Assembly: GCA_053919585.1 (NCBI GenBank)
Contig: CM132824.1
Direction: 5' to 3' (one strand)
Source: Euprymna scolopes
Taxonomy: Eukaryota
Length of the DNA: 64,000 nucleotides
How positions within the stretch are numbered: the first letter of the stretch is position 1; each line of letters opens with the position of its first letter. Position numbers and translations under genes: made by a program. Positions 5,739 to 37,886 of the stretch are shown in pieces. Below the pieces are notes generated by a model. That model made no database searches. It worked only from the letters and a program-made list of their open reading frames with translations, and was not told the DNA's origin.

Positions 5739-6499
5739 TTATGTAAAACAAAATAAAAATATTTTTGCCCTACTTCAGTATTGAGAACTCTTGTATTAAC
5801 CTTGTAAACATTTCATTGGTTGGTTTACGTCGGGAAAATAGTAACCTGCAATACATACATACGGCGGCAAAAGAAAAATTCCACATGAGGGTTGTTCTTA
5901 CCATCTGGCCTTCCCATCTTTAAAATCTTTTTACTGATTCTGCGTGTGTTAATAGTAACAATCTGACAGCCCAGATGTTGATTACTGGGTATATGCACCT
6001 AAGATAACCCCCAAACTAAACAATTTTTGTTCCAAAAATTTGACTCAGTTAACCCCAGTTCAATAAGGTATGTTGGTTTTAAACAATGAAACATATTTTG
6101 TGTGTTCAGACTACAGCGAACGATAAGCATCATCACTAGTGCTTCACCCCATCTTTTGACAAACATATACCACTTTCAACATGTGTTTGTCATACGTAGC
6201 AATAAGATAAAACTGTTATCAAACTGTGATTTTAACGGTAACATAACTGATGTAGATGTTGTTTATGATAGCGTATATGTGACACTAATGCCCACTATTT
6301 CATCATAACTGCTTCAACATTTGTTTTCTTTTTCATATGCGCAAAAAAAAACAACATGGCAAAACACGAAAAAGAAGAAAGATATACTGATGATGAGGTA
6401 TAGCCTCGAAATATATTTATAAATTTCAATATAAATTTCAAACAAAATAAATATATGTTTATTTTGTAATAAAACGTTTTTGGCTTCAAACGTATCTAA

Positions 6500-7036
6500 T
6501 CTACTACCGATAACAATGGTCAATAACGCTTTATCTGAAAGTACACCTTTTAAACTTTTCGGCTTCACGTTCACAGAATACATGAGTTGGAACAATTGCA
6601 TTGAGAGTATTGCCAGGGCCGCTGCGAAGACGGTAGGTTCTCTTTACCGGGCTAGAAAGCTACTTACGCCAGAAAGTATCCTGTACCTCTTTAAGACCAT
6701 GATTCGCCCATATATGAAGTATTGGTGTCATGTTTAGGCTGGTGTATCTGCTACTAGTCTCTCTCGCTCCTAGACAAGGTTCAAAAGAGAGTTGCGAACC
6801 TGATAGGTCTTGAACTGTCATCTCAGCTTCAGTCTCTGTCCCATCGATTACATGTGCATCCCTCTGTTCTACAAGTATTTTAACGGTGAATGCTCTGACA
6901 AACTGCAAGCACTTGTACCCCCACGACGTAAATACCCCCGACAAACCCGACAAGCAGCTAAATCCTACCCCTTCACAATAGAGATCCCTAGATGTAAGAG
7001 AGCCTTCTACTCCAGTAGTTTCTTTCCCAGAACCGT
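6500..7036 (+). pseudogene. Truncated, decayed copy of CR1-like subfamily 1
   Basis: Encodes FKLFGFTF..MSWNN.IESIARAAAK.VGSLYRARKLLTPESILYL and SFFPRT. It aligns by eye to ~34855-35390 with frameshifts and stops. Confidence 0.9.
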
Positions 7037-10510: not shown

Positions 10511-11482
10511 TAGATAATCTTTGCAAATAATACGCATGTAAATAAACATGGAATCGATACGTTTAATAGATTTACAAAATGCAATTACAGTTTAGATGTG
10601 AATTTTATATATAAAACATGCTATTTTAAGTGTTTAGAAATAAAAAGAAATCTGCTCATTCTGTTGTGCAAATTTTTATCCGATGTTACAACGAAAAATT
10701 GCTTCATTTTAAGGATACAGCCATATAAAAAAGAGTTTTTTTTTATTATTTTAAATTGCATTTAACTTAGTAGTGTGAATGGAACTTCCTTGCTGTAGTT
10801 GATAATTGAATTTATTAATATTGGAATTTATATATCTATGAGATTGTAAGCATAGACTTCTTTGCATCTATCACTGCTATCTATATTTCGCTAGAGATTG
10901 GTTTGTATGGCTTGTTTCTAATTTTTAACAGAATATTTATACTATGATATTCACTCAAATTACAAACGTATAATACAATAAAATATAGTATGCTGTCCTG
11001 AAACTGTTCTTAGCATTTGCATATAATATTTATTTATCTATTAGAACTATAGAACATACCTTACAGTGATATCAATAATGAGCGCAGTTCTTTCGGAATT
11101 TATACTTGTTATACTGGCTTACGTCGATGCCTTCGTTAGGTCTCGATAGACAATGGATGCATTTGTAAAGGTAACTGTGCGTGTAATTGTGAGAACAATG
11201 TTGTGCAATCTTCAACCACACATTTCACGAATGAGTCCTATGGCAAAGATAAGTGCTAGAACGGCAGCGAAATCCGACTATGGAGTGAACGTGCTTAATC
11301 CGGAACAAGGGGTGTGCCTATCCAACCAACAATAAACCAAGCCGATGTCTTACATATAGTCAAATTTCGCCGCGGTTTGCTTGATCTGTGCTAGTTAATA
11401 GACGTTCTTAGTTGCGGCCAGGTTGCTCATGTACTCGCCTCGCATACAGCAGGCACGGGTTTCGAAGCCTGAGTTCCGATCA

Positions 11483-11528
11483 GTTTAACTGATGAGCCCG
11501 AAATGAGGGCGAAACCCGAGTCGTGTAC
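11483..11528 (+). ncRNA. Hammerhead ribozyme-like motif (family A), intact core
   Basis: Reads GTTTAA CTGATGA GCCC-GAAATGA-GGGC GAAAC CCGA GTC GTGTAC. The core and helix II are perfect and helix I is eroded. A degenerate inverted copy lies immediately upstream. Confidence 0.7.
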
Positions 11529-11719
11529 ATTCGGTTTGTTGTCTCTTGTCAGCTGCGACATTNNNNNNNNNNNNNNNNNNNNNNNNNNNNNNNNNNNNNN
11601 NNNNNNNNNNNNNNNNNNNNNNNNNNNNNNNNNNNNNNNNNNNNNNNNNNNNNNNNNNNNNNNNNNNNNNNNNNNNNNNNNNNNNNNNNNTAATATTACT
11701 ATACAACATATTTATTGAT

Positions 11720-16119: not shown

Positions 16120-17838
16120 TCACTGAAGAGCCTCAGGGTAAACTACATTTCTGCTGCTTTGATTTGGAGCCAGAATGTAGAGTTTTTCTGAATTTCCTGT
16201 CCGGCTGATGGAGACGTAGAACATACCGTGACTGAAGCAGTCTGGTGTCAAGTCTACGCCAATGGTGTTAAATGTCTGACCTTGACTTTTGTGTATGCTC
16301 ATTGCAAAACACACCTTCACAGGAAATTGGAGTCTCCGGAATTTAAATGGAAGTTCTGAGTCCGATGGAACTAAGGGGATCCTTGGCAGTAGAACGGTTT
16401 CGCCTTTGTAGGGACCACAGGAAATGGTGGCCTCAAGTACATTGGTGTGTAATCTGGTGATAACACATCTGGTTCCGTTTGTTGTTTTTGGCGGTTTCAA
16501 GGATCGAAGAATCATGATTGGCGATCCAATTTTGAGATTTAAAATGTGTGGAGGCATTCCAGATATCTCCAAAGAGTTTAAAAACTCCACAGGGTAGTGA
16601 ACAGCTTCATATTCATTAGTAGCCGAATCAACTGACTTGTATAGCTTTGTGTCTCCTGGAAATTCATCCATTATTGAATTGTTCAAATGATTCACATTGC
16701 TGTTTAATGGCGAAATAATAGCCCTCTCAGCAAGCCAATCCGGTGATTTTCCATTGTTTTGCAGGTCTGGGTACACTTTGTCTTTCAGTTGCTTCTGATT
16801 ACCGACACATTTACCAAGCGCAGTTGGAATCTTAATTGTGTCAGGTGAAGAAGTGATAGGAAACTGACCATTACCGATCTGGAGAAGCAATTTTGAGAAG
16901 TCTGCTGCAGCTGTGTTATCAGAGATATAGGCTCTCATATTAGTAGTCAGTCTCTTCACTATAACGTGCCTCCAGAGATAGGATTGTTTCAAACTTGCAT
17001 TGACAATGTTAGCCCTTGTGCCATTTTTAACCACTGGGAGGATTTGACGGAAATCACCGCAAAATAAGGTTGGAATGCCACCCATGGGATTCTTGTTTCC
17101 TGTGATGTCTTGCAGTGTTCGATCAATTGCTTCATAAGCACTCTTGTGCGTCATTGGGGCTTCGTCTACAATGATTGCAGAGGTGTCTCTAATTACATTT
17201 GCCAAGGCTGAGTTACCAGTAATTTTGCAAACTGGCTGATCCATTCGATGAGTATCCAAGGGTACTTTAAAAGTGCTGTGAAGAGTGCGGCCACCTTGTA
17301 ATAGAGTAGCAGCAATGCCACTGGATGCTGTTGCAAGCACAATCTTTCTCATGGATCTAATCTTTGCAAGGATCAAATTGATTACAAAAGTCTTGCCCGT
17401 ACCACCTGGAGCATCAAGAAACATCATGTTTTTGTTCATTTCACCTTGTGCTTCCAACATTGCCATGAATGAATTGTAAACTTCTCTTTGAGAATCGGTC
17501 AGTTTTTCTTGCATATTTTCTGCTTGTAGGGAAAGTTCTTCAAGATTATAAGTAACTTCACGTTGATACTCTCTCGCGAGTCTTTCATCTCTCCCTTGCG
17601 TTGGTGCAGGTAATTCATAGCTTGCCAATGGTTGACCGCACATGAGGAGAACTTTTTCTTCAATTAGACAAAGAGTTTTATTGTAGATGTCCTCATTAAA
17701 ATCTGCTTCTGGATTGTTAACTTCTTGCCTGTATCTGTGAAGAATGTCTTCAGATATTACATCACGAAAAGCCATCCAGATCTCAAGAGGATTTCTTGGC
17801 TCACAGGCTGTTAAAATTATCACAAATAGGCTTCGCAA
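16120..17838 (-). CDS. Helitron RepHel C-terminal PIF1-family (SF1B) helicase
   Basis: Walker A DAPGGTGKT, Walker B IVDEAPM, GDFRQILPV, AMSIHKSQGQT and HGMFYVSISR. It is in the same frame as the Rep ORF, separated by a TAA and 13 sense codons (AVGEASATQSPSN), so the original ORF was ~1571 codons. Confidence 0.95.
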   Translation of the reverse strand: MRSLFVIILTACEPRNPLEIWMAFRDVISEDILHRYRQEVNNPEADFNEDIYNKTLCLIEEKVLLMCGQPLASYELPAPTQGRDERLAREYQREVTYNLEELSLQAENMQEKLTDSQREVYNSFMAMLEAQGEMNKNMMFLDAPGGTGKTFVINLILAKIRSMRKIVLATASSGIAATLLQGGRTLHSTFKVPLDTHRMDQPVCKITGNSALANVIRDTSAIIVDEAPMTHKSAYEAIDRTLQDITGNKNPMGGIPTLFCGDFRQILPVVKNGTRANIVNASLKQSYLWRHVIVKRLTTNMRAYISDNTAAADFSKLLLQIGNGQFPITSSPDTIKIPTALGKCVGNQKQLKDKVYPDLQNNGKSPDWLAERAIISPLNSNVNHLNNSIMDEFPGDTKLYKSVDSATNEYEAVHYPVEFLNSLEISGMPPHILNLKIGSPIMILRSLKPPKTTNGTRCVITRLHTNVLEATISCGPYKGETVLLPRIPLVPSDSELPFKFRRLQFPVKVCFAMSIHKSQGQTFNTIGVDLTPDCFSHGMFYVSISRTGNSEKLYILAPNQSSRNVVYPEALQ

Positions 17839-17877
17839 ATTTGAAGGTGATTGAGTGGCACTTGCCTCTCCTACTGC

Positions 17878-20835
17878 TTAATGCAAGTGATGGTCATTTT
17901 CTAGAAGGCCTCGAGCAAGGCACGCTGCTCTGTATGTTTCAAACACCTGACCATTGTATGCTCGCAAATTTTGAAATGAAGTTGGACCAGCAACCTCATT
18001 GAGCAACAGGCGTAAGAAATAACACTCCCCTGCTTTTGGACTAATCGTGTAGATTCTCCCAATGCATGGTGCCTTCCATACATCATCATTTTCAGTACCT
18101 TCAACTTGTACCCCACGCATTCTTCTCATCCATTTCTTTGTCGATTTGTTCCAAGTGTAAAACTCAGGGACTGTTACGTATTTGAGACCCCTTGCAAAGT
18201 CATCCTCATGGCAGAGTTGAAAAAATGCTGTCAAAGTTGTGGCAAGCGGTGGACCTTGGGCTCGTTCCAGAGCAGTATCAGCTGAGAACATGACACGCTG
18301 CCCATTTTCAAGATGAACAGAAAGTTGTACAATTGGGGGGAAATGTTCATGGATGGGATGTTCCAATATCCTCCAGGCCGCCTCTGAACTGCCGACATAC
18401 CTTGCATTCTGGAACTGCTGGATCTCATCCACAATGTGACTTTGTACTTGGCCTTGTTGGTTAGCTGCTCCATCAGTTCTTTGTAGTTCAAACACTGCTT
18501 GATCACATCCTTTATTCACGTATTTGAGGGCATATTTGATGCTTTGGATCGAGCTGCAAATTTCTACGTTAATGTGAGCGTTGAACTGCTGAAGGAGGAC
18601 CTTGTTGTACGGAACAATCCACTGGTTTGTTATTTCTTGATTAACATACCGACCATTTCTCTTCATCCTTATTGTACCAGTCTGACCTCCATCTTCTGGT
18701 TTTCTTCGCCTGTACTTGGGGTAAGAGTCTTGGCCTTGCTCGGTACACTGAAGAAATTCTTTTGGGTATTTTTTGGAACATTTGTTGTCAATCATACATG
18801 GACAATTTGGATTAAATGGTCCACAAGATCCATGCACCATATGTGCCATCACTTTAGCATGAAGATCAGGATCTTCCTCTCTGTCAGGGATCTCTGTAGA
18901 TATGCAGAGATCCAGTTTTTCTGGTATAAGTTTGTCCTCTGGGGCCTGCCAGGTGAGGATGTGTGCATGCGGCAGTCCTCTTTTTTGATATTCAATACTG
19001 TACAGGAAAGCCCTCAACCTGCCAAATCCGCCCTTTTTAATAAATTCAAGTAACTTTTTTAGCTTCTGCCTGAAAACCCTGGCAACAATATCTGGACGAT
19101 CCTGAGGGTCTTGCCCTTGAAGACAATTTTCTGTAATTTCTGTCCACTTTGGATTTGTTGTGAACGTGATGAAGAGGTCGGCTCGGCCCATTCGCCGAAC
19201 ATATGTCATGGCATCACTTTGACGCTCAAACATGTACCGAGGGCCTCCTGTATAAGTTGCTGGAAGTACAACTCGTTGACCAAACTGTTCTGGATTCCCA
19301 TCCTCCCTAAGAATTGAATCTCTCAAGTTGCTATAATTGTCAGCTCTCAGGGTCTGTTGCTCACACCTCAGGAACTGTAAACGTTCTGTTTCAATCTTGC
19401 AGTACACATCCACCAGCCATTGTTGAAATAGCCTTCGGTACCAGAGAAAATAGTTTCCAGGCCGAGTCATTAAATGGTACGAATAAAATTGCTGTTGGGT
19501 AACTTTTCGCCCATTGGATGCCTTCATGTAGATGTTGTAAGATGGAGAACCATAGGGGCACATTAACGGGTACATTAAAGTATCGTAGAGGGGATGTAGT
19601 TCGGAGATCCATTTTAATGTATCATTTCTAAAACGCAAGACAATATCCCGGTTAGCTGTTGGTTCATTCTCCATTAATATTCCAATCTCATACGTTGTTG
19701 TTGGAGCATTGAATCGCCGTGGATGCTCTTCTTGCGGCCTTCGGTCTTCCCTTATGACAACTTTATGTTCTACCAAGTGTTCTTCTTCAATCCTCTCCTT
19801 TGTTGTTTTCAGCTGACAAATGAAGCTGTTGTTCTCATGTAAAAATTCAGTCAGACTTTGGAGAATGTCTCCATTGAGTCTACTGTCACGTCCCCGATTA
19901 TGTAGTTCCTCTTCCAGACTATCCAAGAAGTAGACTTGAATAAACTTTGCTGTTTCATCTTCAGGTGATAAAAGACTCCCAATCTGGTGGCAAACCTGGC
20001 CTCGAATTCTAAAAGAAGGATTCCACCCATGTACTGCCGCAATTTTGTGACCAAATGATGTCATTGCAAAACAATTGTTATAACTGCGTAGATTTTGCAG
20101 AAAATCTTTAGAGATGGGACCATTGCCGGAGAGCAAATCTTGAAGCAACTGAGGCAGTGGTGGAAAGCTATCAAGCACAACTTTGCCAGAAGAACAACAA
20201 CAACCAGGGGTTTCTCCTTTAAATTTTACAGCTGAGCAATGTTGACATACTTTGTCTATTTTTCCTATATCAGCTGTAGTGAGAGAGTCATTTTTGTTGT
20301 AGAGCAATCCTTTTCTATTGCAGTGTTCTATTTCATGGTGTCTCAAAGCAGTCATTCGTTGTCTAGCTGCCTCGTTTTCTGTCAATTGCTGGGGCAAAGT
20401 CATACTCTCTCTCCATGCAGCCTCTCGTTGTTGCCCTTGGTATAGGCGAAAGCTTCGTTGGGTTTCCGATTCATTCTGATGTCGTTGAACCACTCTCAAC
20501 TGACCTTGTGTACGTCTACTTACCTCATATAATTCATTCGATCGTAATATTGCTTCTCTTTCCAGTGCATATCTTTGCCTTTCTTGAATTTCATCTTGTG
20601 ATGAATTTAACCGCCTTACAGCATGTCTAGTTCTGTCAGCTTCACGTTGGGTTTCTCTTTCCAAATCTGACAGTCTTGCTCTCCTTTCTCTTTGACGTAT
20701 CCTGTTAAGTTCTAGACGTCTTTCTCTATCTGAATTGTTTTCATTGGAGCGAATTGCAGCAACTCTTAGTCTATTAGCTTCCAATCTTTCCATTCTTTCT
20801 TCCTCACTTTCGTTTCTACTTCGTTTGGGTGGCAT
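17878..20835 (-). CDS. Helitron RepHel N-terminal part: 23-aa repeats, Zn-finger-like motif, HUH/Y2 Rep domain
   Basis: 985-aa ORF. It has CQHC...CCC (Zn-binding-like), Rep motif I LFITFTTNPKW, motif II EYQKRGLPHAHIL (HUH) and motif III KYALKYVNKG (two Tyr). It ends at a TAA that is in frame with the helicase ORF. Confidence 0.95.
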   Translation of the reverse strand: MPPKRSRNESEEERMERLEANRLRVAAIRSNENNSDRERRLELNRIRQRERRARLSDLERETQREADRTRHAVRRLNSSQDEIQERQRYALEREAILRSNELYEVSRRTQGQLRVVQRHQNESETQRSFRLYQGQQREAAWRESMTLPQQLTENEAARQRMTALRHHEIEHCNRKGLLYNKNDSLTTADIGKIDKVCQHCSAVKFKGETPGCCCSSGKVVLDSFPPLPQLLQDLLSGNGPISKDFLQNLRSYNNCFAMTSFGHKIAAVHGWNPSFRIRGQVCHQIGSLLSPEDETAKFIQVYFLDSLEEELHNRGRDSRLNGDILQSLTEFLHENNSFICQLKTTKERIEEEHLVEHKVVIREDRRPQEEHPRRFNAPTTTYEIGILMENEPTANRDIVLRFRNDTLKWISELHPLYDTLMYPLMCPYGSPSYNIYMKASNGRKVTQQQFYSYHLMTRPGNYFLWYRRLFQQWLVDVYCKIETERLQFLRCEQQTLRADNYSNLRDSILREDGNPEQFGQRVVLPATYTGGPRYMFERQSDAMTYVRRMGRADLFITFTTNPKWTEITENCLQGQDPQDRPDIVARVFRQKLKKLLEFIKKGGFGRLRAFLYSIEYQKRGLPHAHILTWQAPEDKLIPEKLDLCISTEIPDREEDPDLHAKVMAHMVHGSCGPFNPNCPCMIDNKCSKKYPKEFLQCTEQGQDSYPKYRRRKPEDGGQTGTIRMKRNGRYVNQEITNQWIVPYNKVLLQQFNAHINVEICSSIQSIKYALKYVNKGCDQAVFELQRTDGAANQQGQVQSHIVDEIQQFQNARYVGSSEAAWRILEHPIHEHFPPIVQLSVHLENGQRVMFSADTALERAQGPPLATTLTAFFQLCHEDDFARGLKYVTVPEFYTWNKSTKKWMRRMRGVQVEGTENDDVWKAPCIGRIYTISPKAGECYFLRLLLNEVAGPTSFQNLRAYNGQVFETYRAACLARGLLENDHHLH

Positions 20836-30907: not shown

Positions 30908-31117
30908 ATAAAATATATATGGCGATTAAGCTACACAGAATATCCCGCGTTTCATCCACTCACGGATTCTTCAGGCTTAAAGCCTTAAAGCATGAAGAAT
31001 CCTACAGTAGATGAAACACGGAATATTCTACGTAGCTTAATCGCCATATATATTTTATAATCTATTAACTACCTACGTATTGAGCACTGTTGAAGTAAAT
31101 ACTTTAAGTTTACGCAT
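30908..31117. repeat. Head-to-head inverted pLTR-like pair with hammerhead-like cores (family B)
   Basis: Arms of ~70 bp. The minus core is CTGAAGA ATCC-GTGAGT-GGAT GAAACGCGG at 30945-30974. The right arm extends to AAGTTTACGCAT, as at 45760. Confidence 0.85.
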
Positions 31118-31789: not shown

Positions 31790-34700
31790 AGATATAATCC
31801 CCAACAAACTAACCCAGTAACACTAACAACGCGGGGTCGCAGAAATACCTGGATTAGAACCTAGGCGCGGAGAAAACCCTCTCAGGGCTGACGGACCCAG
31901 TAGATCTTCCCAGATCATCCGTCTAGGAGAAGGAAAACTCTGAAACTAAACCAAAGGGGAGAGAGGCCTCTTCAGTCTTGGATGACAACCTTCCTAGAGC
32001 TGGTGACTCAAACAAATTCACCGGTTTGCAAACCTAAATTGCTTAAGGAGTAGATAGGCTCTGTCTATCGCCCGGCTTCCATACTCCTTCTTTGCCTATT
32101 AGTCAAGCGCAGAGACACTATCTCAGTGATTCGACAGAAACACCCAGCGGTAGATCTTGTTTCCTGGCTAGGGCAATGAACGCCGTTCTTCCCCATTCCC
32201 AGCATGCCCCACCCCTAAAACTGAACATTTGGGAGTGCTTGAGTATAAGATATGCCTGAGCAGTTAGATTGGGTTGACCTTCTCCTAAAGGGTTGAGGGT
32301 ACCGGATTGACAGTTCCTGGCTGCTGTTCCCGACTGGTAGTACAGGAGCCCTAACTCTTTGGTAGCGCTTAGAGCGGCTGCTCCATCAACAGTTGAATAA
32401 TATCGGGTTGTTTGCAGTGCCATGACGCGCATGGAAAGGGACCCTGCACTCATCCCCGGTGGGCTTTCCTGAGGCCACAATCCTAATTGGAGAAAGGTCA
32501 GCTGATGGTCTACTTGTGATGCATGTCTGAAGCTCCGCATAACCTCTTGCTTAGCTCCCCCTTACCGAAACTCTTAAAAAAAAATATGACGACAGTACAA
32601 TCTAAAAATAAGCTTAAACCAGGATTAGGGACAAACAAATTCAACTTGCCTCCTCCCTTGAGGCTCTCATTCACAAATATCCGTGGGCTTAGAACTAACT
32701 TAGCTGATGTTGAAGCATTTCTCTTAACAAATACCCCGGATATCTTAGCACTAAGTGAGACTAACCTACACTCCTCCATTCCCTCTAACCACTTTAACAT
32801 GCCTGGATATCTCCCACTCTGCCGTAAGGACTCTGACAGACATATGCACGGACTTGGAGTTTACATTCGTAATACCCTTCCCTTGACTAGAGAAACAAAC
32901 CTAGAAACAGATGATCAAGCCTTTATGTGCTTTAGACTAAACGTGCAACACAGTATTAGCTACTATTATTTTCTCTACCGCTCTCCCTCGACTCAGGACT
33001 GCTCCATAATAAACAAAGTATCTGACAGCATAGACACGGCACTGTCCCTCGACACTAGCGCACAAATACATGTGTTTGGTGACTTTAATGTCCACCACAA
33101 AAACTGGCTTGGATTCTCTGCTCACACAGATGCAGCGGGCAGCACAACCCATAGCTTCGCTATATCTCACTCCCTATCACAAATTGTTACGTTTCCAACC
33201 CGTTTCCCTGACCAGGAGGAACAACACGCATCACTTCTAGATCTGTTTTTGACCACAGTTCCCGATGACTGCATAGCGAAGGCCCACAGCCCACTCGGGA
33301 ACGCTGATCATGCAGTGATAATGGTTGAAATCGCCCTAAACTCTAGACCCAAAACTGAAGAGCCAGTGCTCAAAACAACGAGATATTATAATAAGGCTGA
33401 CTGGGAAGCCATCAGGGAACTAATTAGAGATGCTCCATGGAAAAATATTTTCTCTCTCCCTGCTGAACAGTGTGCAAACGAGACCACTGACTGGTTCAAA
33501 ACTGCAATCGAAGCGCATGTTCCCATGCGGAAATTTTATAGTAAGCCCCACTCTCCCCAATGGTTTACGTCGACTTGTGCAACTGCCATTACTCAAAAGC
33601 AGCATGCATACCGTAGGTTTAACCGACATAAGTCCAGTTCAAACAGACTGAAGTATATAGAAGCTAGAAATAACGTTAAGAAAGAAATAGCGACAGCTAA
33701 GAGAGAATTTACGGAAACCACTAAAAAGCGCATCGAAGCACAAAAACTAGGAACTCGAGACTTCTGGAAAATCTACAACAGTGTAGTAAATAATGGGCAA
33801 TCGACAATTCCCCCACTAACCAACAATCACGAGGTTGTCTCCTCAGCAACCGACAAGGCTAACATGCTTGCCAGTCGGTTTGCCTCAAACTCCACACTGG
33901 ACCCTTCCAACCACCCCCTACCTGACTTTCCTATGCGGACAGACGCCACACTAGACGATCTGAAAACCACCCCTGCTCAGGTGCATGCTATCATAAAAAA
34001 CCTTGACACCTCAAAAGCATGTGGACCCGATCTTATCCCAGCTGTGCTATTAAAAAAGTGCTCAGCCGAAGTAGCTCCAGTTCTCTCCAAACTCTACAAC
34101 AAATGTCTTAATGAAGCTTGCTTTCCGGGCTGTTGGAAAACTGCTTCTGTTGTACCAGTATTCAAGAATTCTGGTGAAAGGACAGACCCATCAAATTATC
34201 GCCCCATTAGCCTCCTTCCACTTTTTGCCAAAATATTTGAGACCATAATTAACCACGCTCTAATCCATCATCTTACAGATGCTAAACTACTGACTGACAA
34301 ACAATATGGATTTAGACAAGCCCGTTCCACAGCAGACATCCTCACCGTGATCTCTGAACGTATATACCAATCACTGGACAAAGCGGGGGAAGGCAGAGCG
34401 GTAGCTCTAGATATATCTAAGGCTTTTGACAGGGTATGGCATGAGGGTCTCCTCAGTAAAATCAGATCATACGGTATCACTGGTAGAATACTTAACATAA
34501 TTAAATCCTTCTTAGATAAGAGAAAAATCCAGGTAGTCCTCGACGGTCGCACATCTAAACAATATGATATAAATGCGGGAGTGCCCCAGGGTTCTATCCT
34601 TGGACCTCTATTGTTCCTGATATTCATAAATGACCTCCCCGACAACATTGCCTCTGAGATGGGTATATATGCTGATGACACTACACTCTATGGCAGACAC

Positions 34701-35554
34701 GACAGGAAGACGAATGAACACATTTCTAAAGAAATGGCAGAAACACTAGAGGAAGACCTCCAATCTGTAGTGGAATGGGGACAAAAGTGGTTGGTCGCGT
34801 TCAATGCTGCCAAGACTAAACTAGTTTCATTCAATAATTACAAGAAACCCTCTCTACCACCAATAGCAATGGCCAACGACTCTTTATCTGAGAGTCCATC
34901 TTTCAAACTCCTTGGCCTAACGTTCACAGGAAACATGAGTTGGAACAATTACATTGAAGGCATTGCCAGGGCCGCTGCAAGAAAGGTGGGCTCTCTCTAC
35001 CGTGCTAGAAAACTACTAACACCCGAAAGTATCCTGTACCTCTATAAGGCCACCATTCGCCCATGTATGGAGTATTGCTGCCACATCTGGGCTGGTGCAT
35101 CTGCTACTAGTCTCTCGCTCCTTGACAAGGTTCAAAAGAGAGTCGCAAATCTGATAGGCCCTGAACTGGCATCTAAGCTTCAGCCTCTGTCCCATCGACG
35201 AAATGTTGCATCCCTCTGCCTGTTCTACAAGTATTTTAGTGGTGAATGCTCTGATGAACTGCAATCACTTGTGCCCCCACGACGCGAGCACCCTCGACAA
35301 ACCCGACAGGCTACTAGATCCCACCCCCACACTGTAGAGGTCCCTAGATGTAAAAGATCTTTTTACTCCAATAGTTTCTTCCCCAGAACCGCAAGACTCT
35401 GGAATTCCATTCCAGGTCCCTGCTTCCCCAACAGTACTGACGTGCAGAAGTTCAAGTGTAACGTGAACCGACACCTTGCTGCCCAAATCCCTACATAGTA
35501 CCCCAGTAGTTGTTGCCCCTGATAGTAGCCCCCTACACCAAAGTGGCAATTTGC
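31790..35554 (+). mobile_element. Full-length or near full-length CR1-like LINE (subfamily 1), with GC-richer structured 5' leader and short 3' UTR
   Basis: The 3' UTR (TAGTAGCCCCCTAC...GTGGCA) is shared with the copies at 25650 and 46000, and the tail is hidden by an N gap at 35555. The 5' boundary is uncertain and may extend to ~31130. Confidence 0.7.
32523..35498 (+). CDS. Intact non-LTR retrotransposon polyprotein: AP-endonuclease plus reverse transcriptase (CR1 group, Zenon-like)
   Basis: 991-aa uninterrupted ORF. APE motifs are TNIRGL, LSET, YRSPS, GDFN, LDLFLT and DH. RT motifs are NYRPISLL, QYGFR, LDISKAFDRV, GVPQGSILGPLLF and YADD. The C-terminus has RPCMEYCCHIW and SFFPRTARLWN, typical of CR1-like elements. 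The clade call is from motif memory. Confidence 0.93.
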   Translation: MSEAPHNLLLSSPLPKLLKKNMTTVQSKNKLKPGLGTNKFNLPPPLRLSFTNIRGLRTNLADVEAFLLTNTPDILALSETNLHSSIPSNHFNMPGYLPLCRKDSDRHMHGLGVYIRNTLPLTRETNLETDDQAFMCFRLNVQHSISYYYFLYRSPSTQDCSIINKVSDSIDTALSLDTSAQIHVFGDFNVHHKNWLGFSAHTDAAGSTTHSFAISHSLSQIVTFPTRFPDQEEQHASLLDLFLTTVPDDCIAKAHSPLGNADHAVIMVEIALNSRPKTEEPVLKTTRYYNKADWEAIRELIRDAPWKNIFSLPAEQCANETTDWFKTAIEAHVPMRKFYSKPHSPQWFTSTCATAITQKQHAYRRFNRHKSSSNRLKYIEARNNVKKEIATAKREFTETTKKRIEAQKLGTRDFWKIYNSVVNNGQSTIPPLTNNHEVVSSATDKANMLASRFASNSTLDPSNHPLPDFPMRTDATLDDLKTTPAQVHAIIKNLDTSKACGPDLIPAVLLKKCSAEVAPVLSKLYNKCLNEACFPGCWKTASVVPVFKNSGERTDPSNYRPISLLPLFAKIFETIINHALIHHLTDAKLLTDKQYGFRQARSTADILTVISERIYQSLDKAGEGRAVALDISKAFDRVWHEGLLSKIRSYGITGRILNIIKSFLDKRKIQVVLDGRTSKQYDINAGVPQGSILGPLLFLIFINDLPDNIASEMGIYADDTTLYGRHDRKTNEHISKEMAETLEEDLQSVVEWGQKWLVAFNAAKTKLVSFNNYKKPSLPPIAMANDSLSESPSFKLLGLTFTGNMSWNNYIEGIARAAARKVGSLYRARKLLTPESILYLYKATIRPCMEYCCHIWAGASATSLSLLDKVQKRVANLIGPELASKLQPLSHRRNVASLCLFYKYFSGECSDELQSLVPPRREHPRQTRQATRSHPHTVEVPRCKRSFYSNSFFPRTARLWNSIPGPCFPNSTDVQKFKCNVNRHLAAQIPT

Positions 35555-35744: not shown

Positions 35745-36566
35745 TGTACGTGAATACCCTTTATGTAAGATTTTAAATGTTTAGATCAGAAATTTCGTAG
35801 AGACCTCAGGCGTAAGTTTTTTTTTTTTTTTTTTTTGATTTTTACCCAAATGTTTAACAGTTAACATTTATTATTTCGGTCTTACATCAAAATATTTTTT
35901 TTCCCGTGTCCAAGTTTCCTACATCTAAAATTTCAAGTGTTCAGAACCTAAATTGGCGGAGGAGTTTGATAGAATTTGCAAACGTAAACTCTTTCAACCT
36001 TGACATTTTGGCAGCCAAATATTCGCTCCAAAACCGATTCAAATGCTTGCCTGAATAACCTCTATGTATTAATTTCAAATGTTTAGACGCAGAATTGGCT
36101 GAGTCGTTTGCTAGACACCGCAAAGGTCAAATCTTGGGAACTTTTACCGCTTGAAAGCTCAAATTTTCGATCCAAATCGATTAAAGAGCATGTCCTATCA
36201 CTGAATGTCTGTTATGTAAAATTTCAAACGTTTAGACCAGGAATTGGCTGAGTAAGTTGGTAGAGATCGAAGAGGTCAACCTTTTAAATCGTTTACCCCA
36301 ATTGTGACACCTTTACATTTAATTTTTGGGGCTACTATCAAATTATAAATATTGATACAAATCCAAATAACTTACATTTATAATTTCAAGAGTTTACACT
36401 CAAGATTAGCGGATGAGCTTGGTAGAGTTTTCAAAGGAAAAATAATTAAACTTTGACCTCTTGACAGCAAAATTTCTGGTCAAAATTTCATTCATAAGAT
36501 TCTCCCAAACCTACATACCCCTTATATCAAATCTCAAGTGTCTAGACCGAAATTGCCAGAGTTATT
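35745..36566 (+). repeat. Degenerate tandem array of about six ~150-160-bp units
   Basis: AAATTTCAA.TGTTTAGA...AATTGGC.GA.GAGTT.G.TAGA recurs at about 35770, 35930, 36070, 36220, 36380 and 36530. An inverted monomer lies at ~24805-24881. Confidence 0.7.
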
Positions 36567-36717
36567 NNNNNNNNNNNNNNNNNNNNNNNNNNNNNNNNNN
36601 NNNNNNNNNNNNNNNNNNNNNNNNNNNNNNNNNNNNNNNNNNNNNNNNNNNNNNNNNNNNNNNNNNNNNNNNNNNNNNNNNNNNNNNNNNNNNNNNNNNN
36701 NNNNNNNNNNNNNNNNN

Positions 36718-36870
36718 GTCGCAGCCCACAAGAGCCATGACAGTCAAAGAACCGGAAGCCCAAGACTTGAGGTTCGCCCTCATTTGGGCTCATCAGTTAG
36801 ACAAATGAAGGCGAAGCTTTAGTCTTGGACTTCCGGTTCTTTGACTGTCATGGCTCTTGTGGGCTGCGAC
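36718..36870. repeat. Foldback palindrome, 50-bp arms (49/50 match) around hammerhead family A
   Basis: 36718-36767 is the reverse complement of 36821-36870 with one mismatch. Confidence 0.95.
36758..36802 (-). ncRNA. Type I hammerhead ribozyme-like motif (family A) inside a foldback element
   Basis: Minus strand reads GTCTAA CTGATGA GCCC-AAATGA-GGGC GAAC CTCAA GTC TTGGGC. Helix I has 6 bp (two GU) and helix II has 4 bp. There is one core mismatch (GAAC instead of GAAA). Confidence 0.7.
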
Positions 36871-36920
36871 GTTGTTTGGCTGTGGACTTTGTTATATACA
36901 CTCACTCACATTCTGAAAAT

Positions 36921-36991
<71 letters not shown>

Positions 36992-37886
36992 GCATCGAAC
37001 GTCAGAAATCCAAACTCCCGTCTATCTGTCTATCTATCTATCTATCTACATAAATAGTTGTTTTGAATTTGATTCTTTGCAAATAGCAACAAATCAAACA
37101 AGATTACAGAAATTGCAATTGTATCTTAAGACGCATTAAAAGTATTCCTTAATTATTCAGCATTTCATAGTATCATCATGTTAGGCTATAAAGTAATAGC
37201 GTTATAGATATAAATGTTTCATACGCTTATATTTCGATTTACGTATTTGAACGTAGATCGGTTTGAATTGTTTACATTTACAGGATTCACCAATTTAAAA
37301 GCAAGTATTTTTCTTATCATATATTTCCACTGTTTATGTACTTTTGTGAATTACGCATAAAATTACTTTGGAGAAATCACATTTAAGCCAACGTGATAGA
37401 AAGGACAAAATAAATACAAAATTAAAAGACTTCAAAATATGAATATGGTGACTCTCGTTGAATTTGCGCATGAGTAAAAATAATAAGAATTGAAGAGCAA
37501 GTTGAGATGAACATTAGTCAAACAATTTGCGGACATATTTTTGTACTCGTTATTTATCAACCTAAAGAAAGATTTTTCTTCGTTATGAACCACAGTTTTT
37601 GTATTGTTACTGTTTCCTTTTAAATTCAGTGTTATGTGGTCAGTTGTTTAAGAATCATCAACTAAACACATATTCATTTACAATTTTATTTATATAGATT
37701 ATCATCCGTCGTTTAACTAAAACAAGCAGTGCATGCATAAAGCGAATCCCCCTAACAGTGTAATTTGCAACCTTCTATCATATTCATTCGGACGAAATAA
37801 AAATGTGAAGTATTATTTACACATCAGATTTGTTTAATTTTCTCGCCTGTTATTCTTGTTACATAAGAAGCGCTGCCTTCTTTTCG

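What the first reader, a model, noticed from the sequence alone, without database searches (positions are those of the whole stretch)
36718..36870. Palindromic non-coding element carrying a complete type I hammerhead ribozyme (family A)
Seen: three homologous cores at 36758-36802 (minus), 36803-36830 (plus, partial) and 11483-11528 (plus). They give the consensus GTCTAA-CTGATGA-GCCC(G)AAATGAGGGC-GAAAC-TCGA-GTC^TTGGAC. That is a 6-bp helix I, canonical core, 4-bp helix II, self-complementary helix III (ACTCGAGT) and a GUC site. Established: palindromic helix III is typical of dimer-activated hammerheads in Penelope pLTRs and retrozymes. Inference: this is a ribozyme-bearing non-autonomous retroelement family, with a longer helix I than the usual minimal PLE motif, inserted as head-to-head pairs. 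Each copy here has at least one defect, so activity is predicted only for the consensus.
Basis: partly seen in the sequence, partly recalled or inferred. Interest (0 to 1): 0.75.

Follow-up and report, generated by a model that had tools for sequence, protein, structure and literature searches.

The report
Dead inverted pair of hammerhead retrozyme copies
This palindrome is the insertion scar of two truncated, mutated copies, joined head-to-head, of a very abundant short mobile element that carries a tRNA-like piece and a self-cutting hammerhead RNA; it is a dead copy of a known kind of element.

Summary
Positions 36718-36870 form a 153-nt foldback with 41-nt perfect arms. A type I hammerhead lies on the minus strand at 36758-36802, a partial one on the plus strand at 36802-36830, and a third copy at 11483-11528. 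Both full window copies score below Rfam's cut-off (24.5 and 26 bits; cut-off 34) because of point defects. They belong to a family whose junction and cleavage-site patterns match at about 6,000-6,900 places in this 5.9-Gb genome. Better-preserved members score 38-57 bits.

The full unit is 410-414 bp. It holds a tRNA-Ala-like head (Rfam tRNA 29-39 bits), then the hammerhead, then a tail. It occurs as tandem arrays, solo copies and, very often, head-to-head pairs inside (TA)n microsatellites.

The palindrome itself is not a propagating element. Its exact junction occurs only 5 times genome-wide, and other pairs have other junctions, with short overlaps or fillers. The (TA)n target, the inverted 5'-truncated partner, the partial tandems and a one-sided 22-27-nt extension match Penelope-like elements of the same genome and the published description.

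This is a new member of a known kind (animal retrozyme, Sm-alpha type). The scan has already met such elements many times on other DNA of this genome. No RNA evidence could be obtained.

The parts
36718..36802 (-). Copy A, 5'-truncated: a full hammerhead (36802 down to 36758) and a 40-nt tail ending GCTGCGAC at 36718. Whether it continues into the masked stretch 36567-36717 was not examined.
   Evidence: It aligns to unit positions 407-414 plus 1-81 at 96.6%.
36758..36802 (-). Type I hammerhead with helix I of 6 bp, CUGAUGA, helix II of 4 bp and a GUC site. It is defective: GAAA is mutated to GAAC and the helix III loop CTCGAG to CTCAAG.
   Evidence: RF00163 24.5 bits against a cut-off of 34. 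Paralogs with the unmutated motif score 38-57 bits.
36802..36806 (.). Head-to-head junction: 5 nt (CAAAT on the plus strand) shared by the 5' ends of both copies (microhomology).
   Evidence: Read. This junction occurs at only 5 places in the genome with at most 1 mismatch.
36802..36920 (+). Copy B, 5'-truncated inside hammerhead loop II. It holds the 3' half of a hammerhead with four substitutions (36802-36830), the tail to 36870, and a 3' region that includes the 22-27-nt extension, ending ...CTGAAAAT.
   Evidence: Aligns to unit positions 13-133 at 92.6%. L002 shares the whole layout at 94%.
36921..36995 (.). (AT)n microsatellite, the insertion target on the visible side.
   Evidence: The paralogs lie in (TA)n too.
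11364..11562 (+). Second, older family copy (about 75% identical to the unit). It holds a decayed tRNA-like piece (about 11410-11482), the hammerhead at 11483-11528 and the tail to GCTGCGAC, then a masked stretch.
11260..11354 (-). Inverted, 5'-truncated partner of the second copy (71% identity), which makes that locus a head-to-head pair as well.

Best explanation
Positions 36718-36920 hold two 5'-truncated copies of one short non-autonomous retroelement. They are joined head-to-head at a 5-nt microhomology and sit in an (AT)n microsatellite. The full unit of the family is 410-414 bp: a tRNA-Ala-like head with near-consensus A and B boxes, then a type I hammerhead, then a tail.

Inferred life cycle. 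Arrays or dimers are transcribed, possibly by Pol III from the tRNA-like head. The hammerheads cut the transcript into unit-length RNA. A host ligase circularises it. A reverse transcriptase primed by a nicked (TA)n target then copies the circle or multimer. This gives solo, tandem and inverted insertions.

The inverted partner, the (TA)n target and the one-sided extension point to a Penelope-like element (RT plus GIY-YIG endonuclease) as the enzyme source. (TA)n reads the same on both strands, so both nicked ends could prime on the same TA-rich site of the RNA. The two cDNAs would then be joined at their 5'-truncated ends. This twin-priming step is my own inference.

The window copy is dead. 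It lacks the tRNA-like head, it has only one complete hammerhead, and that one has a mutated GAAA.
For: Shown.
- Family membership and copy number.
- Hammerhead scores: 38-45 bits in paralogs and 53-57 bits in the best subfamily.
- An Rfam tRNA match of 29-39 bits lies directly 5' of the hammerhead.
- Unit length is 410-414 bp, and the array of at least 9 units at C8:10432194 is the same family.
- Copies lie in (TA)n, with 3' ends at unit position 111 or 133-138 and variable 5' ends.
- 16 head-to-head pairs were found among the fetched loci. In 15 of them both outer ends are these 3' ends (L056 ends elsewhere). In 14 of the 16 one arm ends at 111 and the other at 133-138.
- Junctions differ between pairs, with 0-12-nt overlaps or fillers of 1-61 nt.
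- Among the first 100 pattern matches on contig 1, I counted 11 close minus/plus (head-to-head) pairs and no plus/minus pair.
- Penelope-like elements of this genome (806-aa ORFs, C-terminal GIY-YIG, 15,396 first-look candidates) show inverted 5'-truncated partners and partial tandems in all three loci looked at. In L084, whose ends I read, both outer ends lie in (TA)n and one end carries a 30-nt extension.
- These hallmarks are described for PLEs in PMC8557442. Animal retrozymes are described in PMC7229834. tRNA-like hammerhead SINE-like elements (Sm-alpha) are described in PMC2770079.
Against: - Transcription, cleavage at GUC and circles are therefore inferred from the literature on related elements.
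- No Penelope-like element sharing the 3' end of this family was found. The three PLE loci I fetched share only a 13-nt chance-level match with the unit (E 0.48).
- The hammerhead-like motif in the PLE L084 does not match RF00163 even at E 10.
- ARAGORN does not call the tRNA-like head.
- The left flank of the window locus is masked, so the second outer end could not be examined.
- The loci were chosen by similarity or by hammerhead score, so the proportions are biased.
Confidence: 0.85

Rival explanations
1. The family is an ordinary tRNA-derived SINE copied by a LINE whose 3' end is a (TA)n tail. The intact LINE just upstream in the window would be an example of such a LINE. On this reading the hammerhead is a passenger.
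For: An intact 991-aa endonuclease plus reverse-transcriptase ORF lies at 32523-35498 (+), with its 3' UTR running towards the foldback. In L052 a similar repeat precedes the (TA)n that holds a family copy. Microsatellite tails are common in LINE/SINE pairs (own knowledge).
Against: Multi-unit tandem arrays, strictly head-to-head pairing (11 to 0) and the one-sided 22-27-nt extension in 14 of 16 pairs are Penelope hallmarks, not LINE ones. Insertions have variable 5' ends, and some exceed one unit. The LINE's own 3' end is masked in the window and could not be compared.
Confidence: 0.08
2. The palindrome arose at the DNA level after insertion, by template switching at a replication fork or by repair of a hairpin-capped break. 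It did not arise during retrotransposition.
For: Short microhomologies at junctions also fit replication-based template switching. Substitutions cluster at the centre of the palindrome (6 in the two hammerhead parts, none in the 2 x 41-nt arms).
Against: In 15 of 16 pairs both outer ends are the family's usual 3' ends, and the copies examined lie in (TA)n. In 14 of 16 the two ends differ by the same 22-27 nt. The autonomous PLEs show the same architecture. A post-insertion event would not respect element termini.
Confidence: 0.04
3. The hairpin is a functional small-RNA precursor (miRNA or siRNA type), or else an assembly artefact next to a gap.
For: The hairpin is a near-perfect 69-bp stem, and there are weak Rfam miRNA matches of 24-38 bits. 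An N run touches its left end.
Against: The miRNA matches are far below their cut-offs of 74-100 bits and only reflect a long stem. The same stretch fetched from the assembly has no N (I counted N runs and did not read the letters), so the N run is a mask and not a gap. Twenty other loci have the same kind of foldback, with diverged arms and different junctions.
Confidence: 0.03

Closest known systems
Animal non-LTR retrozymes (Cervera and de la Pena 2020, PMC7229834; Li, Clavereau and Pollet 2026 preprint, 10.64898/2026.07.22.740005)
   Same: Type I hammerhead in short, non-coding, low-GC tandem repeats of 150-450 bp. Here the unit is 410-414 bp with 46% GC, and arrays reach at least 9 units. 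[quoted passage not shown] A link to Penelope-like elements has been proposed for these elements.
   Different: This family has a tRNA-like head directly 5' of the ribozyme, a feature for which I found no mention in those two papers. Expression and circles are not shown here. The window locus is a truncated inverted pair, not a tandem.
Sm-alpha / Sj-alpha SINE-like elements of Schistosoma (Ferbeyre 1998 and Laha 2000, as cited in PMC2770079)
   Same: A tRNA-derived head is joined to an active-type hammerhead in a very abundant short element. The helix II sequence is close to the Schistosoma-like Rfam consensus.
   Different: The host is different (a large animal genome that earlier scan notes call a mollusc, probably a cephalopod; I did not verify this). 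The tRNA type differs: Ala-like here, Gln-like there. This family has a (TA)n target and inverted pairs, and I did not check whether Sm-alpha does.
Penelope-like elements and their insertion architecture (Craig et al. 2021, PMC8557442)
   Same: An inverted 5'-truncated copy sits next to the main copy. There are partial tandems, a short extension at one end only, and a preference for (TA)n. All four are seen in this family, and in PLEs of the same genome.
   Different: The family has no ORF. No sequence is shared with the three PLE loci examined. The hammerhead is a full-size type I motif with a 6-bp helix I, not the minimal PLE variant.

Membership tests
Hammerhead ribozyme type I (Rfam RF00163) | Score at or above the gathering score of 34 bits | tested here: not met
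   The window copies score 24.5 and 26.0 bits. Paralogs of the same family score 38-57 bits. The family qualifies, but these two copies do not.
Hammerhead ribozyme type I (Rfam RF00163) | Conserved core CUGANGA ... GAAA ... UH, with helices I, II and III | tested here: not met
   Locus 1 has CUGAUGA, GUC, a 6-bp helix I and a 4-bp helix II, but GAAC in place of GAAA and a changed helix III loop. Locus 2 has an intact core but two mismatches in helix I. The majority sequence of the paralogs has every feature.
Hammerhead ribozyme type I (Rfam RF00163) | Self-cleavage at the predicted site | not testable with these tools
Animal non-LTR retrozyme | Type I hammerhead inside short tandem repeats (150-450 bp) of low GC | tested here: met
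   Arrays have a period of 410-414 bp. The unit has 45.7% GC. This holds for the family; the window locus itself is not tandem.
Animal non-LTR retrozyme | Expressed as unit-length linear and circular RNA | not testable with these tools
Sm-alpha-type SINE-like element | A tRNA-derived head with Pol III boxes joined to a hammerhead | tested here: met
   RF00005 scores 29-39 bits (cut-off 29) and ends 3-10 nt before the hammerhead in 10 of the 12 loci scanned. The anticodon loop reads UGC or CGC (Ala) by eye. ARAGORN calls none. The head is absent from window locus 1 and decayed in locus 2.
Penelope-type insertion (non-autonomous PLE derivative) | Inverted 5'-truncated copy adjacent to the main copy, with 3' ends outward | tested here: met
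   Both window loci show it, as do 16 pairs among the fetched loci. Orientation is 11 to 0 in favour of head-to-head.
Penelope-type insertion (non-autonomous PLE derivative) | Short extension present at one end only, and a (TA)n target | tested here: met
   In 14 of 16 pairs one arm ends at unit position 111 and the other at 133-138. (TA)n flanks are seen. In the window only the right end is visible, and it carries the extension.
Penelope-type insertion (non-autonomous PLE derivative) | An autonomous PLE in the genome that shares the 3' end or pLTR sequence | tested here: not met
   BLAST of the unit against three PLE loci gave only a 13-nt match. The hammerhead-like motif in the PLE L084 is not recognised by RF00163. 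Only 3 of thousands of PLE copies were examined.

The most novel reading that the evidence does not exclude
The thousands of short insertions of this family record how Penelope-type integration makes inverted pairs. (TA)n reads the same on both strands, so both nicked ends prime on the same TA-rich site of a circular or multimeric RNA. The two cDNAs are then joined by microhomology, often where reverse transcription stalls inside the folded hammerhead. One end keeps a fixed 22-27-nt extension. A second, separate possibility is that the 15-bp helix predicted between the tRNA-like T-arm and the GAAA/helix III/GUC segment is a built-in switch that holds the ribozyme off until the tRNA-like head folds.
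Probability: 0.3. Interest if true: 0.5.

Novelty: new member of a known kind. Interest (0 to 1): 0.27.

Why it matters
The locus itself is a dead relic and has no special importance. The family is of some use. Its junction and cleavage-site patterns match at about 6,000-6,900 places, and its insertions are short and easy to read. They show the full set of Penelope-type scars: the (TA)n target, inverted 5'-truncated partners with microhomology junctions, and a coupled one-sided extension. Craig et al. 2021 name the formation of these structures and the microsatellite bias as open questions of PLE integration, so such a family is a convenient natural data set for them. It also extends the tRNA-head-plus-hammerhead design, known from schistosomes, to another animal lineage. 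I found no paper in the held library that links hammerheads with cephalopods. The host was not identified here, and the scan has already reported this design many times in this genome.

Tried and rejected
- A gathering-threshold Rfam scan of the whole window gave nothing, because the local copies are mutated.
- ARAGORN on seven paralog loci found no tRNA.
- The search for an autonomous partner failed. Three Penelope loci share no DNA with the unit, and the hammerhead-like motif in one of them (L084) is not recognised by RF00163 at E 10.
- A Helitron association is rejected. The Rep/helicase ORFs at 16120-20835 are about 4.6 kb from locus 2 and unrelated to locus 1.
- The LINE 3'-hairpin idea is rejected, because the foldback occurs at many loci without that LINE.
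- The idea of a propagating palindromic element is rejected, because the junction is found only 5 times.
- The masked stretches were left alone. L001, the same stretch from the assembly, was fetched automatically, and I only counted its N runs.
- I make no statement about the masked letters, although paralog sequence that may correspond to them appears in the alignment.

Full report
**Observation.** It is a foldback. Arms 36718-36786 and 36802-36870 are 93% complementary over 69 nt, and the outer 41 nt are perfect. As RNA it folds at -127 kcal/mol, 21.6 standard deviations below shuffled sequence. Rfam's type I hammerhead model matches exactly 36758-36802 on the minus strand (24.5 bits) and 11483-11528 on the plus strand (26.0 bits). 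Both matches cover the full model but lie below the cut-off of 34, so a gathering-threshold scan of the window is empty. The plus-strand half motif at 36802-36830 is present. In locus 1 the core GAAA reads GAAC and the helix III loop CTCGAG reads CTCAAG. In locus 2 helix I has two mismatches.

**Masked stretches.** The N runs beside both loci are masks, not gaps. The same stretch fetched from the assembly has no N. I only counted N runs there and did not read those letters. I make no statement on what the masked stretches contain.

**What the element is.**
- The 153-nt stretch has about 1,470 first-look candidates in the 5.9-Gb genome. Some match over the full length at 72-94% identity, and many match over one half at 97%.
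- Twelve half-matching loci give the real anatomy. A tRNA-like piece of about 72 nt lies directly 5' of the hammerhead. A tail follows the hammerhead and runs into TTATATA. In tandem copies the sequence then continues into the region that precedes the tRNA-like piece.
- Rfam scores the tRNA-like piece at 29-39 bits (cut-off 29) and the hammerheads of these loci at 34.9-45 bits. ARAGORN does not call the tRNA. Its anticodon loop reads UGC or CGC (Ala) by eye.
- The spacing between successive hammerheads is 410-414 bp. The best hammerhead hits of the whole genome (53-57 bits), including an array of at least 9 units on contig 8, belong to this same family.
- Pattern counts allowing one mismatch give 6,037 places for the junction of the tRNA-like 3' end and the hammerhead, and 6,877 places for the hammerhead 3' half with the cleavage site. 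The reversed-pattern controls give 0.
The genome-wide majority sequence keeps CUGAUGA, GAAA, GUC and a 6-bp helix I.

**What the palindrome is.** I use unit coordinates in which position 1 is the fifth base of the hammerhead and cleavage falls after position 35.
- Copies end at position 111 or at 133-138, next to (TA)n, and start at variable positions. Some are longer than one unit.
- Sixteen of the fetched loci are head-to-head pairs, with the 5'-truncated ends in the middle. In 15 of them both outer ends are the usual 3' ends.
- Their junctions differ, with 0-12-nt overlaps or fillers of 1-61 nt.
- Nine of the 32 inner ends fall inside the 39-nt hammerhead (binomial P = 0.002). The loci were chosen for having a hammerhead, so this count is biased.
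- The window junction is a 5-nt overlap at 36802-36806. It joins copy A, which starts at the hammerhead's 5' edge, to copy B, which starts in loop II. This exact junction occurs at only 5 places in the genome.
- The palindrome is therefore a recurrent by-product of insertion and not a propagating unit.
- Locus 2 is also a pair. Its inverted partner lies at 11260-11354. The sequence just 5' of its hammerhead is the tRNA-like piece in direct orientation, not an inverted copy.

**Who copies it.**
- In 14 of 16 pairs one arm ends at 111 and the other at 133-138. This is a one-sided extension of 22-27 nt (P = 0.002 if the two ends were independent).
- Among the first 100 pattern matches on contig 1, I counted 11 close minus/plus pairs, no plus/minus pair, and several tandems.
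- Craig et al. 2021 list the same features for Penelope-like elements: partial tandems, an adjacent inverted 5'-truncated copy, a short extension often at one end only, and (TA)n as a preferred target.
- The genome holds many such elements: 15,396 first-look GIY-YIG candidates and ORFs of about 806 aa with a C-terminal GIY-YIG domain.
- The three loci I fetched all show inverted and tandem copies at 98-99% identity. In L084, both outer ends lie in (TA)n and one end carries a 30-nt extension.
- I infer that a Penelope-type enzyme copies this family.
- The partner itself was not found. These PLEs share no DNA with the unit, and the hammerhead-like motif in L084 is not recognised by Rfam.

**How it most likely works.** By analogy with published animal retrozymes, arrays are transcribed, the hammerheads cut the transcript to unit length, and a ligase closes circles. 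Inserted copies run uninterrupted across the cleavage site and can exceed one unit. This fits a circular or multimeric template primed at an internal TA-rich site by the (TA)n target. My own proposal for the inverted pairs is that both nicked ends of the self-complementary (TA)n prime, and the two cDNAs are then joined by microhomology. The window copy has no tRNA-like head, only one complete ribozyme and a broken core, so it is inactive.

**Comparison and novelty.** The family works like, and meets the tested criteria of, animal non-LTR retrozymes. It has the tRNA-head design of schistosome Sm-alpha. Helix III, with two base pairs and a tetraloop, is the usual invertebrate form, and dimer action is not needed. 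I found no paper in the held library that joins hammerheads and cephalopods, but I did not identify the host. Earlier notes of this scan report many tRNA-headed hammerhead families with Penelope-type scars on other DNA of this genome. My results agree with them. This is a new member of a known kind, and the locus is a dead copy, so interest is low to moderate.

**Side observations.**
- RNAfold pairs the T-arm of the tRNA-like head with the GAAA/helix III/GUC segment in a 15-bp helix, which would be an inactive fold. I could not test whether this is conserved in other families.
- The two 41-nt arms carry no substitution, whereas the two hammerhead parts carry six. Two of the six are CpG transitions.

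Noticed in passing
window 30908-31058: Another near-perfect foldback (75-nt arms, 87% complementary, 1 nt between them) of a different sequence family. One arm holds CTGAAGA ... GAAAC, which is hammerhead-like, but I could not fit a full type I or type III motif by eye.
   Followed up: partly
window 32523-35498 (+) and 35929-36566: An intact 991-aa LINE ORF with an endonuclease/exonuclease/phosphatase domain and a reverse transcriptase domain. It is followed by a 3' region with four or five degenerate repeats of about 150 bp that run up to the masked stretch before the foldback. A similar repeat precedes the (TA)n target in L052.
   Followed up: partly
window 16120-20835 (-): Helitron-type ORFs: 985 aa with Helitron_like_N, and 572 aa with a PIF1 helicase domain. 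Both are open.
   Followed up: partly
L053:625-765 (family copy): The predicted minimum-energy fold pairs the tRNA-like T-arm (GGCUCGGGUUUCG) with the ribozyme's CGAAACUCGAGUC segment in a 15-bp helix that buries the cleavage site. This could be an off-state, or simply a consequence of T-loop and GAAA complementarity. The same complementarity serves as a junction microhomology in some foldbacks (L005, L016, L017).
   Followed up: partly
window 36758-36830: Six substitutions relative to the family lie in the two hammerhead parts at the centre of the palindrome, and none lies in the 2 x 41-nt arms. Two are CpG transitions; the rest are unexplained.
   Followed up: no
L084 (G000:C3:120033000-120042999), L085, L086: Young Penelope-like elements (806-808-aa ORF, copies 98-99% identical) as inverted plus tandem clusters. 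In L084 both outer ends lie in (TA)n, one end carries a 30-nt extension, and a motif 32 nt from the 3' end resembles a hammerhead but has U for C3 and no Rfam match. L084 also holds two minimal hammerhead-like motifs 289 bp apart at 2633 and 2922.
   Followed up: partly
window 11563 and 36717: In both family loci the masked run begins within 0-3 nt after the same unit position (the end of GCTGCGAC). I did not look into why.
   Followed up: no
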